Origin: Anaeramoeba ignava BMAN
Lineage: Eukaryota; Protista; Anaeramoebae
Direction: 5' to 3'
Assembly: GCA_028826165.1 (NCBI GenBank)
Contig: JAPDFW010000058.1
Location: forward strand, 186,001-250,000
DNA: 64,000 nucleotides
In this document: positions 3,256 through 58,262 of the stretch, piece after piece
How the letters are laid out: each line of letters begins with the position of its first letter
Position numbering within the stretch: the stretch's first letter is position 1
Translations under genes and position numbers: made by a program
Notes under the pieces: model-generated
The model's input: the letters and a program-made list of their open reading frames with translations, nothing else
Told to the model about the DNA's origin: nothing
Database searches by the model: none

Positions 3256-3369
3256 TTCTTTTTCTTTAATTTAAATTTAAATAATTTAAATTTTGTTAAA
3301 TGAAAAAAATGAAAAACCATTTCCAAAATTAAAATTTTAAAAAAAAACGGAAAAAAAATTGAATTAACA

Positions 3370-3670
3370 ATTTTATCTTTTTAAATTTAATCTTTTTAAA
3401 CTAATCTTTTTAAATTTATCTTTTTAAATTTATATTTTTAAATTTAATTTTTTGTTCCACTTTTGTTTATTTAAATTTAATTTTTAAATTTATCTTTTTA
3501 AATTTATCTTTTTAAATTTAATTTTTTTAAATTTATCTTTTTAAATTTATCTTTTTAAATTTATCTTTTTAAATTTAATTTTTTGTTCCACTTTTGTTTA
3601 TTTAAATTTATCTTTTAAATTTAATTTTTTAAATTTATCTTTTAAATTTATCTTTTTAAACTTGTTTATT
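3370..3670. repeat. Degenerate ~15-nt tandem repeat (TTTAAATTTATCTTT) between the ABCG copies
   Basis: Direct reading; includes a duplicated TTTTTGTTCCACTTTTGTTTATTTAAA block. Confidence 0.75.
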
Positions 3671-47804: not shown

Positions 47805-50469
47805 ATGAATAAATTTAAAAATCTTACTTTTGGGTTAATAAAAAAAAATTCAACTGAAAAAATTCCTTTCAAAAACATTGAAATTCATATTGATATTCAT
47901 GATTTAATTGCTGAAGTTATTCTAACTCAAACTTTTGAGAATAATGAAGAAAATCCGATCGAAATTTCTTATACTTTTCCAAAAAATCCAGAACTTGGAA
48001 TTTGTGGTTTAGAAGTAAATTTAGAAGGAAAAAAACTATATGGAAAAGTTTATGATAAAGAAAAAACGGAAGAAAAATATAATGATGGAATTGCTCAAGG
48101 AAAATTAGTGTAAAAAAAAAAAACTGTCAAAAAAGAGAAAGAAAGAAAAAAATTAAATTGTTTTCTTCTTTCTTTCTAATTTAGATTTAAAACAAGTGAA
48201 GTTGAAGATTTTTTTGAAATGGGAATTGGAAATCTTTCACCAGGAAAAAAATGTGAAATTGTTTTACATTATCTTACTGAATTAAAATTTGATGAGGATT
48301 CTGGAATTAAATTTTCATTACAAAAAATTCCCATTATTCAACAAAAAGATGATCAAAACTCAACAATTATAACAGTAAATGTTGAAATGGATTCCGAAAT
48401 TGAAAAAATAATCAGTCCAAGCCATAAAATCAAAACAACGATTAGAAATAATAAGGCAAAAATGGAATTAAGTGAAGAAGAAAATAAATCAAAAATTTTG
48501 GATAAGAAATTTGTTTTGAAAATTTATCTTTTTGAGCCGCATAAACCAAGAGTGATAATTGAGGAAAAAGATGAAAAATTTGCTTTTCTTGCTTCTCTTT
48601 ATCCAAAATTCCAATCAAATCAAATCCGTCAGGAAATGCTATTTATTGTAGATAGAAGTGGAAGTATGAATGGAGAACCAATCAAATCAGTTTCTCAAGC
48701 TTTGATATCATTTCTTCATGCTTTGCCCCCGAATTGTTTTTTTAATATTCTTGGATTTGGATCTCAATTCCACTTTTTATTTCCTCAATTTATGATGTAC
48801 GACCAAGACTCATTAGAAAAAGCAATAGAATATGCCAAAAATATGAGAGCAAATTTTGGAGGAACTGAATTATTGCATCCTTTAACACAAGTTTTCAATC
48901 AGGAAATAAAAGAAGGTTATTCAAGACAAATATTTCTATTAACTGATGGGAATATATCACAAAATCAAGAAGTTTTTGATTTAATAAAAAGAAGATCAAA
49001 TGAAACAAGAATTTTCACATTTGGAATAGGAAGAAATGTTTCGAAAGAATTAGTCTCAGGAATTGCTAAATTTGGAGGAGGAAGTTCTGAATTCATCATA
49101 AAAAACGAAGATATCCAACTCAAGGTTATGAGACAACTCAATAAAGCTTTAAAACCTGCTTTAACAAACATTGAATTTCAATGGGAAGGGATTGAACCCT
49201 TAATGATTTTCCCATTTAAAAAATTCCCAATTTATTCAGAATCAAAATTTATTCTTTGTGGATTCTTGAGAAAGCTCTCTCAAAATGCAAAACTGTTCAT
49301 TCACGGGAAAAATTTGGATGAAAAACAAATTTGGGAAATCGATTTGGATTTCTCCAAAATTGAACAATCCAAAATTATTCAAACTTTTGCAGCCAAAAAA
49401 CTAATTTTCGATTTGGAGAATAAAACAAGTCAATTCCATTCAAAAGATGGAGAAATTTGTCAAGAAAAAGATCAGAATTTTATTAACAACAAAATTGTGA
49501 AATTATCCAAAAAATTCAATTTAGTTTCTTCTTTAACAAGTTTTTTTATTGAAAGTGATTCTGGTGAAGCGAAACAAGATTTAGGAGAAATGCAAAGTAT
49601 TCATATTTCTCAAAAGAAGAAAAGATTTTTTTCCAATTTATTTAAAAAGCCAAGTAAATCAATAACAAAATTGAAATTTATATCTAAAGAATTTTAAACT
49701 AATAATATAATAAATATTATTTTTAGATACAAAATCTTCAATGGATGTATTAATGATTTCTCCACCAACTAATTTTAGACATGTTTCACATATTGGATAT
49801 GATCCAGAAGAGTATCATGGAAGAATTACGGGATTTGAAACAAAGATGGATCAAATTTATTCTGATTCTGATTCTGATTCTGATGAATGGGATGATTTGG
49901 ATCAAAAAAAAGAAGATTCAATTATTCAAATTAATCAACCAGAAATACCTTCTCTACAACAAAATCAATTTGATTTTGTATCAACTAAACCACCACTTCC
50001 TCCAAAAATAAAACCTAATGAAATATTTATGAATAAACCAAAACCTCCAAAACAAAAACCTAATGAAATATTTATGAATAAACCAAAACCTCCAATTCCA
50101 ATAAAAACAAATCAAAAATTTCAGAAAAAATCCATTTTGACTAAACAAGAAAAACTCAATGAAATTATCAATCTTCAAAAAGCAAATGGTTGTTGGGAAT
50201 TTTCAAATGAATTAATTCAACTTCTTGGTTTTGATTCAAAAAAAATTAAAGAAAATTTACCTGATGAAAAATTTGATCTTAATATTTGGATTTCTTTTAT
50301 TGTTCTTAATTTTCTCAATTTAAATTTTCAAGACAAAGAAGTTGTTTGGAGATTAATTGGAATTAAATCAAGAAATTTTATTGAACAAAATTTGGATCTT
50401 GGAAAATATTCTTTTGAAAAGATATTAGAATTAGGGAAAAAATTTATTATTGAATCCACAAAAAAATAA
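47805..50469 (+). CDS. VWA5A-like VIT + vWA protein with an inserted CRIB/acidic/proline-rich segment; exons 47805-48109, 48185-49653, 49727-50469
   Basis: VIT (AEVILTQTFEN...PIEISYTFP, IGNLSPG); vWA MIDAS DRSGSM, GGTEL, LLTDG, FTFGIG; C-terminal LQKANGCW...W helical domain. Splice junctions are in frame. Confidence 0.88.
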
Positions 50470-50522: not shown

Positions 50523-52575
50523 ATGAATTCACAAAGAAATAAAAAAAGAAAATCAAGTCAAAAAGAAAAAGAAAAAGAAAGTCAAAAACAAAAAGAAAGT
50601 CAAAAACAAAAACAAAAAGAAAAAGAAAGTCAAAAACAAAAAGAAATTGAAAAAGAAACAGAAAAAGAAAAAGAAAAAGAAAAAGAAAAAGAAAGTCAAA
50701 AACAAAAACAAAAAGAAAAAGAAATTGAAAAACAAAAAGAAATTGAAAAAGAAAAAGAAAAAGAAAAAGAAAGTCAAAAACAAAAAGAAAAAGAAAAAGA
50801 AATTGAAACAGAAATTGAAAAAGAAAAAGAAATTGAAAAAGAAACAGAAAAAGAAATTGAAAAAGAAAAAGAAAAAGAAATAAAAAGTAACGATTTCTTC
50901 TTCTTTTTCTCTTTTAAAATTATTTAATTAATTTTCATAACAAACAAAAAGAATCACAAAGATCCTTGAAAAAAACACCTTCAAAAACAATAAATGATTT
51001 ATCAACACAAGTAATTTCAATTCCAATTTTAATTTCAATTCCAATTTTAATTATAATTATAATTTTAATTTCAATTTTAATTTCAATTTTGATTTTAATA
51101 TTAATTTGAAAATGAAAAGGATTTTGAACTTTTAGTATCACAAATGGTTAGATTTTTTGTATTTCATAGTCGAAAAAATATTCCAATTAAAAAAGCTGAA
51201 ATTTCTAAAAATGTTATGGAAAAATATTCAAAAATTAAAGGATTAACTGATTTAGTATTAAATCAAACCAATATTGAATTACAAAGAATTTTTGGATTTG
51301 AAATTTATATGAAACCTCCAAATAAAACTTCTTATTATTTAAGAAATCATTTATCTCAAAAACTTTATCAAATTGATTCTAAAGATATTGATTATCATGA
51401 AACTGAAAATGGTTTTTTGATGGTTATTCTTTCAATATTATTACTTGAAAAGAAAACAATAAATGAGAGTAAAATTTAAATTCAATTTCAATTTCAATTT
51501 CAATTTCAATTTCAATTTCAATTTCAATTTCAATTTCAAAATCAATTTCAATTTCAATTTCAAAATCAATTTCAATTTCAATTTCAATTTAAATTTCAAT
51601 TTCAATTTCAAATTCAAATTCAAATTCAAATTCAATTTTAATTTTAAATTCAAATTCAATTTTAATTTCAATTTCAATATCAATTTCAATTTCAATATCA
51701 AATTCAATTTCAATTTTAATATCAATTTCAATTTTAAATTTAATTTTAATTTCAATTTCAATTTCAATTTTAATTTTAATTTCAAATTCAAATTCAAATT
51801 CAAATCCAAATTCAATTTCAATTTCAAATTCAATTTCAATATCAATTTCAATTTCAATTTCAATATCAAATTCAATTTCAATTTTAATATCAATTTCAAT
51901 TTTAAATTTAATTTCAATTTCAATTTCAATTTCAATTTCAATTTTAATTTTAATTTCAAATTCAAATTCAAATCCAAATTCAATTTCAAATTCAATTTTA
52001 AATTCAATTTCAATTTCAATTTCAATTTCAATTTCAAATTCAAATTTAATTTCAATTTCAAATTCAAATTCAATTTCAAATTCAATTTCAATTTCAATTT
52101 CAATTTCAAATTCAATTTCAAAATCAATTTCAAATTCAATTTTAAATTCAAAATTAATTTCAAATTCAATATCAAATTCAATTTCAATTTTAATATCAAT
52201 TTCAAATTCAATTTTAATTTTAAATTCAAAATCAATTTCAATTTAGAAACACTTTGGGTTTTATTAAAAGAATTTTCTATTGAACCTACTACAATTATGA
52301 ATACACAAAAAGAAACAGCAAAACAAATGATTGACAAATTTATACATCAAGGATATTTAACACGCAAAGCAAAAAATCAAGCAAAAACAGAATATCAAAT
52401 TGGATTTGGAGAAAGAACAAAAACAGAAATAGAAGAAAAAACAATAGCAAATTTTATATTAACAGAAGCATATCGAGAACAAAATTCAGAGAGAGAAAAA
52501 GAAGAATTTAATAAGAAATTTAGTGTTTATTTAAAACCTGAAGAAAAGAAGAATTTAAATGAGAATTCAAATTAA
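50523..52575 (+). CDS. NSE3: MAGE-domain protein, NSE3/MAGE-G1 ortholog candidate (SMC5/6 complex); KE-rich N-terminus, last intron 51469-52246
   Basis: MVRFFVF...PIKKAEI...LQRIFGFEI...YYLRN, GFLMVILSILLL...INE|KTLW.LL, FIHQGYL, FGERTKTEI are MAGE winged-helix motifs. Confidence 0.8.
51469..52246 (+). repeat. 778-nt intron of (TTCAAT/TTCAAA)n
   Basis: Direct reading; GT...TAG boundaries restore the MAGE frame. Confidence 0.85.
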
Positions 52576-53626: not shown

Positions 53627-56600
53627 ATGACAAACACACAAAATACAATTCCAGGAGTAGAAACATCATTTATACAATTTTTCCAAAAACTTCCAACAAC
53701 AAAAAAAGATGAAATCCGATTCTTTGAAAGAAAATCTGATGGGAAATTTTATACATGTCACGGAAATGATGCAAAATTTATAGCGGAAGAATATTATCGT
53801 ACTTTAGCGACACTGAAATACCTTGGACCTCAGAACAACCAGCTGCCCAGCCTATCGTTATCTCAACAAATGTTTGATAGCGTGATTCGCGATCTTCTTC
53901 TTATCAAAAGATATAGAGTTGAGGTTTGGGGGACTGCGAAGAACGAGGATGATTTGGAAACACAAAAAACGAAAAAAGCAAAAAATATCAAGAAAAAAAC
54001 ACAACCGATAAAAACGCAAAGAGGGAAGAATTGGGTTGTAATCAAAAAGGGATCACCGGGAAACGTGCGTGATTTCAAGGATGTACTATTTGGAGCAGAT
54101 GGCGAAATTGAATATATTGATGCCTCGCCAATTGTAATGGGGATCAAAATAGGAAAAGAAGAAGGCGAACGAGTTCTTGGAATTGCTTTTTGCGACACAA
54201 CATTGCATTCACTTGCCGTTTGCGAGCTCAAGGACGACGAGCAATTCTCGACGTTTGAAAGTCTATGTGTGCAAATTGGCGCAAAAGAATGTTTATTATT
54301 ATCAATGGATTCTGCGAATAAAGAGCAAAAAAGCGATTTGAAAAAAATTCATGAAATTTTGAGGAAAAATCAAATCGTTCTAACTGAACAACAAAAGCAA
54401 CTGTTTTCCGTTAAAAATATCCAGCAAGACCTATCGCGTCTTGTGGGAAATCTTGCGAATCATCTGCAAGAAATGATGAAAAAAAACGCAATTGCAGCAA
54501 CAGCTTGTTTGATCAAATATCTCGATTTACTCGCAAATGATGCAAACTTTGCAATGTACTCGTTCCGCTCTTTCGACCCAAAAAACTTCATGCGTCTTGA
54601 TTCGGCGGCCGTTGAGGCACTCAACTTATTCCCGAGCAAAAAAGACCATATTGACACTCGGGTATCTTTCAATTACTCAAGTTATTTAAATCAATCAAAT
54701 TCAACGCAATCAAAGTTGAACACTCAGAATAATTCAACCGACAACGAAAACGAAAATCAAACGGAATCCAATTCAATCCCAAAATCTTTACTTTCAATTT
54801 CTAATTTGAACCGCTACTCAAATCTTGCGGGTCTTTTGAATGATTGCAAAACAAAAATGGGATCAAGGAAATTGTTCTTGTGGATTAAACAGCCACTAAT
54901 AAACAAGGAGGAGATTGAAAGAAGGCATAATTTCGTCGAGATCTTTTTCGAGGATACTCACACACGTTTTAAACTGCAGACGTTCTTGAAAAAAATCCCA
55001 GATATTAACAGAATCACAAAAAAGTTCCAACGAGGAAGTGCCAAACTCCAGGACATCGTCCAACTTTATGACGCAACCCAAACTCTGAAACAGATATACA
55101 ATACTCTTCAGGAATATGATGCAGACGAAAATGCTCTTGATGACTCCGATGATTTCAACATGGACTCATTCAAGTTCGATAAAGGCGAAGAAAAAACTAT
55201 CAAAAAATCAAATGTTCATATTTTGGAGGATGAGCAGTTGGATGCTCATATTCCAAGCAAAATCTCATCCAAACAAAAGCAACTTGTCAGAGAAGTTTAC
55301 ACACAGCCAATTTCCCAAATCATTTCCGATCTTTCCAATTTCGAGGAAATGGTCGAGAGTATCATCGATCTTTCTCAAGCAGAAAAACACAAATTTTTAA
55401 TTAAATCACATTTCGATCCAGAACTTGATAAAATGAACAAGAAAAAGGAAAAAATCAAGGAGAAGATCGAGAGGATTGAGAAGAAAGTCAACTCCCACTT
55501 CTCCAAATCAAATATCAAGGTCAAGTTTGAATCAAACGATCAAATTGGGTTTTATTTCCGAATTTCAAGAAAAGATGAAAAGGAAATTCGAAACTCAAAA
55601 AAATGGAAGCCGTTAGAAACGCGAAGAGACGGAATACGTTTCTCCACACAAAAACTGATTGATCTCAACAGGAAGAACCAAGAAATTGAGGAGAAATATA
55701 ATCAATTACAAACAGAATTAGTATCTCATGTAATTGAAGTCGCGCTTTCTTATGTTTCCATTTTTGAGGTTGTTGCCGAAACTATTTCTGAATTGGATGT
55801 GATCATAAGCTTCGCCTCAGTCGCTTGCAATGCGCCAACTCCCTTTATTCGTCCTGTAATGTATGATTCAACTCATGGAGTGCTTCGATTGAAGGATTCA
55901 AGACATCCTTGTTTGGAAATGCAAGATGAAGTTAATTTTATCCCAAACGATATTGATATGGAAAAGAATAAGTCATCTTTTATTATTATTACAGGCCCAA
56001 ATATGTTTGGGAAATGTATTGTTGGAGATTCTTTAGTTTTCACAGAAAAAGGGATTTTTGAGATCCAAGATTTGAATCCAAATTTAAATCAAAATTCAAA
56101 TCCAAATTTAAATCAAAAAAATTCAAAAAATTTAAATCAAAAAAATTCAAAAAATTTAAATCAAAAAAATCAAAATTATGGATTCCATTCATTTCCAAAT
56201 CAAAAAAATTCAAAAAATTCAAAAAATTCAAAAAATCAAAAAAATCAAAATTGTTCAAAATTCTCCATTAAAACTAGATTCGGTTTGAAAAAACCTTCTC
56301 ATTTCTTTTTCGGAAAATTCAAAAAATGTCTTACTATAATCACAAAAAGAGGTTTCCAAATTTCAGGAACAAAAAATCATAAACTACTTGTTTCGAATCA
56401 AAATAATTTCTTTTATAAAAAATTTTCTCATTTATCTCAAAATGAAAATGTTATCATTAATTACGGAATGAATTTATGGAGCTCAAAAAAATTAATTAAA
56501 CTTGAAAATCCTCATTCCCAAAAAATCAATGAAAATAATATCATTTATCCAACATCTCTTACTCAAGAATTATCCTTTCTACTTGGAATTATAATCGGAA

Positions 56601-58262
56601 ATGATTCAATTATAAAAAGTGATTCAATTACTTTTAACTCAAAAAACCCAAACAAATCCAAAAAGTTATTGAGATTTTTATTCAAAAAAATTTTCAACTT
56701 TCAAAATATCAACTTTTTCAATCAATTTAATTCGAAATTTTCAATTAAACTCCACAAAGATTTAATTCAATTCTTCAAAACAAACTTTGAATTCAATCTA
56801 AACCAAAAAAGCAAAGAAATACCCAAAAAAATTCTCAGATCTTCTTTTGTTTTAATTGTTTCTTTTCTTTCAGGATTTTTCTTTTTATTCAACAACCAAA
56901 AAAATTTATCAACAAAAAAACAAGATTCCAAAATGATCATCAATTCATCAAAATTATCACAACAAATTCAACTTCTTTTATTGAATTTTGGGATAATTTC
57001 ATCACGAAAAGAAATTTCTTCAAAAGAAAATGATTCAATTTATTATGAATTGGAAATTGAAAAAGAAAGAAAATATCAAGATATTTTTGAGAATTTATTT
57101 GATTTTGATTTTAATTTTAATTTTAATTTTAATTTTGATTTTGATTTTGATTTTGAATTTGATTTTGAAGGAATTTCAAAAAAGAAGCAAAAATATATGG
57201 AAAAACTAATTGAAAAAGGAAAACAAAGTGGAGGATTTTATTTGGAAGAAGAAATCAAGAAAATTGAAAAAGAAACAAATGAAAAAAAGCAAGTATATGA
57301 TTTAGCAATGGAAAAGGAGCATTCATACATTGCGAATGGATTTGTATCACATAATTCAACATTTATCAAGCAAGTGGGCGTGATTGTGCTAATGGCACAA
57401 ATAGGTTCATTTGTTCCTTGTTCATTAGCTGAAATATCAATTCGCGATTGCATTCTTGCACGAGTTGGAGCTGGAGATCGCCAACTTCAAGGAGTATCAA
57501 CATTTTTTGCAGAAATGCTTGAGTCATCCTCAATTCTCAAAACAGCAACTCGCGATTCATTGATAATCATTGATGAACTTGGAAGAGGAACATCAACCGT
57601 TGATGGTTTTGCTTTGGCTTGGTCAATTTCAGAATATATTTGTAAAGAAATTGGCGCTTTTACTTTATTTGCCACTCATTTTCATGAATTAACCGTTTTG
57701 GATAAACATTTATCAATGGTCGCAAATTTTCATGTTTCTTCTTTTACTTCACAGAATAATATTACCCCTTTATATAAAATTAAAAATGGTCCAAGTGACC
57801 AAAGTTTGGGTATTAGAGTCGCTGAAATTACAAGATTCCCTCAATCCGTTATTGATGAAGCAAAGAGAAAACATAAAGAATTGGAATCAAAGAAAAAACC
57901 TTTTGAATATAAATTTCTTTTAGATAAGGAAGAAATTGAAAAGAAAGATTTAGAGATGGAAATTGAAAATGAAAATGAAAATGAAAATGAAAATCAAATT
58001 GAAAATGAAAATCAAAAAGAAAATGAAAATCAAAAAGAAAATGAAAATCAAAATGAAAATCAAAATCAAAATTCAATTAAATCAAGCAAACCAAATTATT
58101 ACTAATTTTCTAAATAATTTTAAAAATCTTCCTTTTGATAAAATGGCTCCTTTAGATGCTTTCCAAAAAATGATTCAATTAAAAAATGAAGTTTTAAATT
58201 CTCAAAATTCTTTTATTTTTGGATTATTGGAAAAAAATCAAGAAAACGAAGAAAAAAAATGA
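53627..58262 (+). CDS. MSH2: DNA mismatch repair protein MSH2 precursor containing an intein; intronless; +1 A slip near 58070 (ORF as given stops at 58105)
   Basis: [58 protein letters not shown]|[60 protein letters not shown]. The MSH2-type C-terminal helix (IITNFL...LPF...[11 protein letters not shown]) lies in the shifted frame. Confidence 0.95.
56015..57355 (+). mobile_element. Intein (447 aa, precursor residues 797-1243) with degenerate LAGLIDADG homing endonuclease, in the MSH2 P-loop
   Basis: Block [14 protein letters not shown]; block [14 protein letters not shown]; LAGLIDADG-like [10 protein letters not shown] and FLSGFFFL; block [15 protein letters not shown]; blocks [23 protein letters not shown] followed by Ser+1. 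Removal restores GPNMFGKST. Confidence 0.95.

What the first reader, a model, noticed from the sequence alone, without database searches (positions are those of the whole stretch)
56015..57355. Intein inserted in the Walker A motif of a nuclear MSH2 mismatch-repair gene
Seen: a 447-aa in-frame insertion splits GPNMFGK|ST. It starts with Cys, has a TxxH block B and ends in HN before Ser+1, so all canonical class-1 splicing residues are present. Established: inteins favour the P-loop GK|S/T site of ATPases (RFC, MCM, RadA, DnaB) and are rare in eukaryotic nuclear genes outside fungi and a few protists. Anaeramoeba is reported to carry many nuclear inteins, so this allele may or may not already be catalogued. 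Inference: MSH2 ATPase activity, and hence mismatch repair and microsatellite stability, depends on protein splicing. That is striking in a genome full of expanded microsatellites, and conditional (e.g. redox-dependent) splicing could modulate mutation rate.
Basis: partly seen in the sequence, partly recalled or inferred. Interest (0 to 1): 0.92.

Follow-up and report, generated by a model that had tools for sequence, protein, structure and literature searches.

The report
Published intein in Anaeramoeba MSH2
A real self-splicing protein element (an intein) interrupts the ATP-binding loop of the only MSH2 mismatch-repair gene of the protist Anaeramoeba ignava, but its mobility enzyme is dead and a 2023 survey of this genome already names it, so it is an ordinary member of a published set.

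Summary
Observation confirmed. 56015-57355 is a 447-aa in-frame insert at GPNMFGK|ST in the genome's only MSH2. It has Cys1, TxxH, block-F Asp, His-Asn and Ser+1, hits Pfam Intein_splicing (E 5e-17) and folds like endonuclease-bearing inteins. No GT-AG intron could remove it precisely. The genome is Anaeramoeba ignava. Gallot-Lavallee et al. 2023 (PMC10710043) name the A. ignava BMAN Msh2 intein and map inteins and introns in Msh2-6, so it is already known. I could not see their Dataset S1 to match coordinates.

Added here: the LAGLIDADG endonuclease has lost both catalytic Asp. The intein shares its site and closest kinship with inteins in about 50 prokaryotic MutS proteins. Related copies sit in the MSH4- and MSH5-like genes, and both MSH6-like genes have an intron 5 nt upstream of the site.

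Need for splicing follows from the split Walker A. Conditional splicing and a link to microsatellites are untested, although short repeats cover 18% of sampled A. ignava DNA against 1.2% around the intein-free A. flamelloides MSH2 genes. The scan earlier reached the same verdict for this genome's FANCM intein.

The parts
53627..56014 (+). MSH2 N-extein, 796 aa (MutS domains I-IV and the start of domain V), ending in Walker A G-P-N-M-F-G-K
   Evidence: ORF; Pfam MutS_I-IV; alignment to MSH2 orthologues
55994..56014 (+). N-terminal half of Walker A. Phe (56006-56008) replaces the usual Gly; A. flamelloides MSH2 has the same Phe without an intein
56015..57355 (+). 447-aa class-1 intein with a degenerate dual-LAGLIDADG endonuclease domain
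   Evidence: Pfam/NCBIfam; alignment; AF2 model pTM 0.83 and PDB fold hits
56015..56053 (+). Block A, nucleophile Cys1
   Evidence: Cys invariant in 41 prokaryotic relatives
56057..56250 (+). In-frame short tandem repeats (56057-56168, 56203-56250) coding Asn/Gln/Lys/Ser-rich insertions absent from all relatives, mostly low confidence in the model
   Evidence: TRF; alignment; pLDDT
56369..56380 (+). Block B T119-K-N-H122
   Evidence: His in 41/41 and Thr in 39/41 relatives
56582..56608 (+). First LAGLIDADG helix (block C), degenerate: Asp to Asn196 and Gly to Asp197
   Evidence: relatives have Asp in 39/41 and Gly in 41/41
56864..56902 (+). Second LAGLIDADG helix (block E), degenerate: the D-T/A-D-G motif is replaced by N-N-Q-K, with a 3-residue insertion
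   Evidence: relatives have Asp 40/41, Asp 36/41 and Gly 38/41
57098..57168 (+). TTTGAT/TTTAAT microsatellite read as alternating Phe-Asp/Phe-Asn, in a linker where relatives carry an optional domain; pLDDT below 50
57293..57310 (+). Block F with D429
   Evidence: Asp in 41/41 relatives
57350..57358 (+). Block G H446-N447 and extein Ser+1 (the Walker A Ser)
57356..58105 (+). MSH2 C-extein (rest of the ATPase domain), ending early in this assembly after a GAAAAT repeat at 57959-58072
   Evidence: Pfam MutS_V; 74% identity to A. flamelloides MSH2 over 180 aa; TRF
58092..58262 (+). Conserved MSH2 C-terminal helices, in a different reading frame from the main ORF (frame break, probably an assembly indel)
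   Evidence: 35% identity over 51 aa to A. flamelloides MSH2 and 28-33% to two vertebrate MSH2; no GT donor in 57861-58110

Best explanation
A resident, no longer mobile class-1 intein in the single MSH2 gene of Anaeramoeba ignava BMAN, already listed in the 2023 survey. SHOWN: the insert has every class-1 splicing residue and a Hint plus LAGLIDADG fold; both catalytic acidic residues of the endonuclease are lost; the closest relatives occupy the same GK|ST site of prokaryotic MutS; related inteins occupy the same site of two other Msh genes of this genome. INFERRED, from the standard class-1 pathway: the 1492-aa precursor is translated, Cys1 makes the N-S acyl shift (helped by T119/H122), Ser+1 takes over the N-extein, and Asn447 cyclises (helped by H446/D429). 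The O-N shift then restores G-P-N-M-F-G-K-S-T, so active MSH2 exists only after splicing, which is probably constitutive. INFERRED history: a MutS-site intein came in by lateral transfer from a prokaryote or a virus, homed into MSH2, MSH4 and MSH5 (order unknown), and lost endonuclease function. It drifted to high A+T, gained microsatellite loops, and persists because only a precise deletion would leave the P-loop intact. Introns next to the site in both MSH6 copies may have blocked homing, as the paper proposes.
For: Splicing residues conserved against 41 relatives while endonuclease residues are lost. Pfam hits. AF2 pTM 0.83 with top PDB matches TliVMA, PhoVMA, PI-PfuI and PI-SceI. Genome identity: a protein on contig C123 is exactly KAJ5068016.1 [A. 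ignava], on a contig of the same 165,247 nt. The paper names the Msh2 intein and Msh paralogue inteins. 50 prokaryotic MutS proteins have an intein at GK|S. Equal-sized site-specific profiles score the MSH2 intein 164 bits for MutS against 104-123 for five other host sites. The three A. ignava inteins group together (SH-aLRT 99-100). A tree holding them with the MutS inteins is 23 lnL better than the quick free tree, p-AU 0.87. Only three full-length relatives exist in the genome. P-loop introns in both MSH6-like genes.
Against: Splicing of this intein has not been shown: the main text reports splicing only for two RPB2 inteins and one ASCC3 intein. No RNA reads could be examined. Dataset S1 and Fig. 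5A are not held, so the site match with the published entry is inferred from one MSH2 gene with one intein. The three A. ignava branches are long and A+T-biased, so their grouping may be partly artefactual. They fall outside the sampled prokaryotic MutS clade, so no donor is named. The AF2 model leans on the alignment of intact relatives.
Confidence: 0.88

Rival explanations
1. Domesticated switch: splicing of this intein depends on conditions (oxygen, thiol state, metal), so MSH2 activity and mutation rate are regulated.
For: Conditional splicing is described for mycobacterial DnaB inteins (PMC6195587, PMC7360933; abstracts only). The host is an anaerobe. The intein has two further cysteines (C80, C105). 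Walker A damage disables MMR in mouse Msh2 G674A (PMC2194233).
Against: No sequence feature here points to sensing. The sister species lacks the intein. It is one of 103 inteins in the genome, in very different hosts. The decay pattern is that of an ageing selfish element.
Confidence: 0.04
2. Burden: splicing is constitutive but inefficient, MMR capacity is chronically low, and this contributes to the genome's microsatellite load.
For: Short tandem repeats (period up to 12) cover 17.9% of the window and 18.1% of 75 kb of gene-picked A. ignava loci, against 1.2% of 57 kb around the two intein-free A. flamelloides MSH2 genes. The intein carries repeat insertions within its Hint domain.
Against: Two species give a single contrast, and they share only 37% average amino-acid identity. 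The A. flamelloides sample is two paralogous regions. DNA polymerases and MCMs also carry inteins in these species. A. flamelloides has two MSH2 copies. The repeats are hexamer-type and may have other causes. Four MutL genes and six MutS genes are present.
Confidence: 0.06
3. The insert is removed as RNA (an intron derived from a dead intein), or the intein no longer splices and the gene is non-functional.
For: The insert is intron-like in A+T (78%). The exact translated ORF is absent from the protein collection, so the deposited gene model differs. The 3' end of the gene has a frame break.
Against: 1341 nt stay open and in frame at 78% A+T. All splicing residues are kept while nuclease residues are lost. 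No GT-AG pair restores the P-loop. The ATPase exteins are 74% identical to the sister species. The 3' frame break may alone explain the different gene model.
Confidence: 0.02

Closest known systems
A. ignava BMAN Msh2 intein and Msh-paralogue inteins of Gallot-Lavallee et al. 2023 (PNAS 120:e2306381120, PMC10710043; Fig. 5A, SI Fig. S7)
   Same: Same species, same host gene (the genome has one MSH2, with one intein), related inteins in several Msh paralogues, introns near the empty site in others, weak similarity to same-site prokaryotic inteins.
   Different: Nothing in kind. The paper calls it a network singleton; with today's metagenomic genomes about 50 same-site prokaryotic relatives are found (22-30% identity). 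Exact coordinates could not be compared because the SI is not held.
Prokaryotic MutS1 P-loop (GK|ST) inteins in Chloroflexota, Acidobacteriota, Bacteroidota, Chromatium okenii, Woesearchaeota and Iainarchaeota genomes
   Same: Identical insertion site, Cys1...His-Asn/Ser+1, collinear blocks A-G; best-scoring profile.
   Different: Most keep both LAGLIDADG acidic residues. They lack the repeat insertions and the strong Asn/Lys/Phe bias. The A. ignava inteins branch outside the sampled clade.
Endonuclease-bearing class-1 inteins of solved structure (TliVMA 7QSS/7QSU, PhoVMA 7QST, PI-PfuI 1DQ3, PI-SceI 1VDE)
   Same: Hint plus dual LAGLIDADG architecture (Foldseek E 2.5e-17 to 1e-6).
   Different: Different host proteins, 10-16% identity.
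MutS-like inteins of Mimiviridae (Green et al. 2018, PMC5784728, two entries)
   Same: An intein in a MutS-family protein from the eukaryotic sphere.
   Different: Viral host gene. Site and relationship were not tested. None of the inteins parsed from the 80 viral loci sat in a MutS P-loop.

Membership tests
Class-1 intein | In-frame insert absent from host orthologues | tested here: met
Class-1 intein | Cys/Ser at position 1 (block A) | tested here: met
   Cys1
Class-1 intein | Block B TxxH | tested here: met
   T119, H122
Class-1 intein | Block F Asp, block G His-Asn, and Cys/Ser/Thr at +1 | tested here: met
   D429, H446, N447, Ser+1
Class-1 intein | Hint fold or profile match | tested here: met
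   Pfam PF14890 over cut-off; model and PDB matches; TIGR01445 under cut-off
Class-1 intein | Retained in mRNA | tested here: inconclusive
Sequence alone excludes precise GT-AG removal.
Class-1 intein | Demonstrated protein splicing | not testable with these tools
   Needs a reporter assay or mass spectrometry
Class-3 intein (Anaeramoeba cluster 1, P-loop hoppers) | No N-terminal Cys/Ser nucleophile; block-F Cys as branch point | tested here: not met
   Cys1 is present; the only cysteines are 1, 80 and 105
Active LAGLIDADG homing endonuclease | Two LAGLIDADG helices with catalytic acidic residues | tested here: not met
   Block C Asp is Asn196; block E D-x-D-G is lost. The fold persists.
MutS P-loop allelic intein group | Same insertion site in a homologous host | tested here: met
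   GPNxxGK|C ... HN|ST in 50 prokaryotic MutS
MutS P-loop allelic intein group | Closer to same-site inteins than to other-site inteins | tested here: met
   Profile scores 164 vs 104-123 bits. The joint clade is not rejected, p-AU 0.87, but is not a supported branch in the free trees.
MSH2 | MutS domains I-V and closest similarity to MSH2 orthologues | tested here: met
   ATPase region 65-74% identical to MSH2s against at most 44% for the five other paralogues
Published A. ignava BMAN intein set | Genome is A. ignava and an Msh2 intein is named | tested here: met
Published A. ignava BMAN intein set | Coordinates match the Dataset S1 entry | not testable with these tools
   No supplementary files held

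The most novel reading that the evidence does not exclude
Mismatch repair in A. ignava is really throttled at MSH2, by slow or conditional splicing of this repeat-laden intein (or by a real frameshift that removes the C-terminal helices), and this helps explain why short tandem repeats fill about 18% of its DNA against about 1% in the sampled DNA of its intein-free sister species.
Probability: 0.07. Interest if true: 0.7.

Novelty: already known. Interest (0 to 1): 0.17.

Why it matters
As it stands, little. It is one named entry among 103 published inteins of this genome. The small additions are a firmer link to a widespread prokaryotic MutS intein group, evidence that its endonuclease is dead, and a measured 15-fold difference in short-repeat content between the two Anaeramoeba species. 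If splicing efficiency of this intein limited mismatch repair, it would tie a selfish protein element to the mutation spectrum of a whole eukaryotic genome. A splicing reporter plus read-level repeat heterogeneity could test that.

Tried and rejected
Spliceosomal intron: no junction pair restores the P-loop. Active homing element: catalytic residues are lost. Class-3 or cluster-1 intein: Cys1 is present and there is no block-F Cys. Phe in the P-loop as a result of intein insertion: the intein-free A. flamelloides MSH2 genes have it too. A second, intein-free MSH2 in the genome: none among six MutS genes. Viral donor: 80 viral loci gave related inteins in other P-loop hosts, many terminase-like, and none parsed in a MutS P-loop; this does not exclude a virus. 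Named prokaryotic donor: trees leave the A. ignava trio outside the sampled MutS clade; the careful tree did not finish, so quick trees were used. I expected A. flamelloides to be equally repeat-rich, which would have refuted the microsatellite idea; it was not. Exact look-up of the ORF found nothing. The paper's supplements are not held. No paper in the library links Anaeramoeba and microsatellites.
Full report
Observation. The window holds one open frame at 53627-58105 (1492 aa) with Pfam MutS domains I-V. Bases 56015-57355 are 447 codons between G-P-N-M-F-G-K and S-T-F-I-K. They begin with Cys and end His-Asn. The insert hits Intein_splicing at E 5.3e-17 and LAGLIDADG_3 at E 1.1e-5, and the NCBIfam intein C-terminal model over its cut-off. 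Taking it out leaves 1045 aa collinear with MSH2 of A. flamelloides, a rodent and a third eukaryote. No GT-AG pair near the junctions restores the P-loop.

Organism and prior report. The genome is 42.8 Mb in 147 contigs with at least 38 intein-domain matches. A protein from contig C123 is identical to KAJ5068016.1 of Anaeramoeba ignava, on a contig of the same length. Gallot-Lavallee et al. 2023 (PMC10710043) report 103 inteins in A. ignava BMAN. They list 'mismatch DNA repair Msh2' among singleton inteins with weak similarity to same-site prokaryotic or other Anaeramoeba inteins. They state that several A. ignava Msh paralogues have homologous inteins, and give intein and intron positions for Msh2-6 in Fig. 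5A. The supplement is not held, so the coordinates were not matched. But the genome has one MSH2 and it has one intein, so this is almost certainly that entry.

Anatomy. Against 41 prokaryotic relatives (alignment A1) the splicing residues are all kept: C1, T119, H122, D429, H446, N447 and Ser+1. The endonuclease is not. The first LAGLIDADG Asp (39/41) is Asn, the following invariant Gly is Asp, and the second motif D-x-D-G is replaced. AlphaFold gives pTM 0.83 and mean pLDDT 78.6, with most of the low-confidence segments on the repeat-coded insertions. The best structural matches are endonuclease-bearing inteins. The insert is 22% GC against 34-36% in the exteins and holds three short-repeat runs. 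This is the pattern of an old element whose splicing is under selection and whose homing is not.

Relatives. Fifty prokaryotic MutS proteins carry an intein at the same K|S junction. Named genomes include Chloroflexota, Acidobacteriota, Bacteroidota, Chromatium okenii, Woesearchaeota and Iainarchaeota. The wider family is large (4085 representatives at E 1e-30) and also occupies GyrA-, RNR-, PhoH- and terminase-like hosts (named from flanking motifs). Profiles of seven sequences per host site, none from Anaeramoeba, score the MSH2 intein 164 bits for MutS and 104-123 for the others. In the genome only three full-length members exist: MSH2, an MSH5-like gene on C81 (370 aa, open) and an MSH4-like gene on C123 (one base short in a T run; read with X at the break). 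They group together with SH-aLRT 99-100, on long A+T-biased branches, outside the sampled prokaryotic MutS clade. Holding them with the MutS inteins gives a tree 23 lnL better than the quick free search found, p-AU 0.87. That fits allelic origin but does not prove it and names no donor. Both MSH6-like genes have a GT-AG intron (77 and 867 nt) inside the P-loop Gly codon, 5 nt upstream of the intein site; the MSH3-like P-loop is uninterrupted. This fits the intron-versus-intein pattern the paper describes. Paralogue names other than MSH2 are inferred from motifs and domain content.

Mechanism. By the established class-1 pathway (own knowledge), Cys1 forms the thioester, Ser+1 the branched ester, Asn447 cyclises, and the O-N shift joins Lys to Ser. 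The junction lies between the Walker A Lys and Ser, so the precursor cannot have a normal ATP site. A Walker A point mutant of mouse Msh2 binds mismatches but is MMR-deficient (PMC2194233). Dependence of MMR on splicing is therefore a fair inference. It is not special to this gene: dozens of conserved proteins in this genome are in the same position. Splicing of this particular intein is not shown here or in the paper's main text.

The microsatellite idea. I tested it by comparing repeat content. Tandem repeats of period up to 12 cover 17.9% of the window and 18.1% of 75 kb of A. ignava loci picked by gene. They cover 1.2% of 57 kb around the two intein-free A. flamelloides MSH2 genes. A full set of four MutL and six MutS genes is present. 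I give a causal link about 0.06 and a regulated switch about 0.04.

Two side points on the host. The Phe in G-P-N-M-F-G-K, where 69 other eukaryotic MSH2 hits have Gly, is shared with A. flamelloides (G-P-N-C-F-G-K-S-T) and so is independent of the intein. The conserved C-terminal helices of MSH2 lie in another frame after a GAAAAT repeat, with no splice donor available. Similar frame breaks appear in the MSH3- and MSH4-like genes. In a nanopore-based assembly indel errors are the likeliest cause; reads would decide.

The RNA test is therefore open. The scan's earlier notes include a follow-up that reached the same kind of verdict for the FANCM intein of this genome; I had identified the organism and the paper before reading it.

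Verdict. A real intein, correctly described and already published. Interest 0.17.

Noticed in passing
window 57959-58262: MSH2 frame break in or just after a GAAAAT repeat. The conserved C-terminal helices (58092-58244) are in another frame and no GT donor is available. Probably an assembly indel; if real, MSH2 lacks its C-terminal helices.
   Followed up: partly
window 56006-56008; P0051, P0054: MSH2 of both Anaeramoeba species has Phe at the Walker A position that is Gly in all 69 other eukaryotic MSH2 hits. Effect on the ATPase is unknown.
   Followed up: partly
G000:C123 132583-133685, minus strand (L009, L022); break near 132948: Related intein in the MSH4-like gene with a one-base frame break in a T run inside the second LAGLIDADG helix: an assembly error or a pseudogene.
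   Followed up: partly
G000:C81 234190-235299, minus strand (L021): Intact 370-aa related intein at GPNSSGK|ST of the MSH5-like gene. With the MSH4-like copy, both presumed meiotic MutS genes carry it.
   Followed up: yes
L023 and L024 (G000:C75 and C89): Two MSH6-like genes each have a phase-1 GT-AG intron (77 nt and 867 nt, the long one filled with microsatellite) 5 nt upstream of the empty intein site.
   Followed up: yes
L025 about 3351-3447 (G000:C82): The MSH3-like gene also changes frame just upstream of its P-loop, so three of six Msh genes show frame breaks in this assembly.
   Followed up: no
whole window; L021-L025 versus L026, L027, L203: Short tandem repeats cover about 18% of sampled A. 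ignava DNA, including coding regions, against about 1.2% in A. flamelloides. No paper in the library mentions this.
   Followed up: partly
L026, L027: A. flamelloides has two intein-free MSH2 paralogues, each next to a ribosomal S17 gene, on different contigs.
   Followed up: no
window 51144-52575: MAGE-domain gene (Pfam E 7e-16; probably NSE3-like) upstream of MSH2, apparently split by a long microsatellite-filled intron.
   Followed up: no
window 49741-50469: Small protein with an N-terminal CRIB/PBD motif (Pfam E 5e-9).
   Followed up: no
L028-L107: The same intein family occupies GyrA-, RNR- (two sites), PhoH- and RecD-like hosts in many metagenomic genomes, and inteins from each well-sampled site largely group together.
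   Followed up: partly
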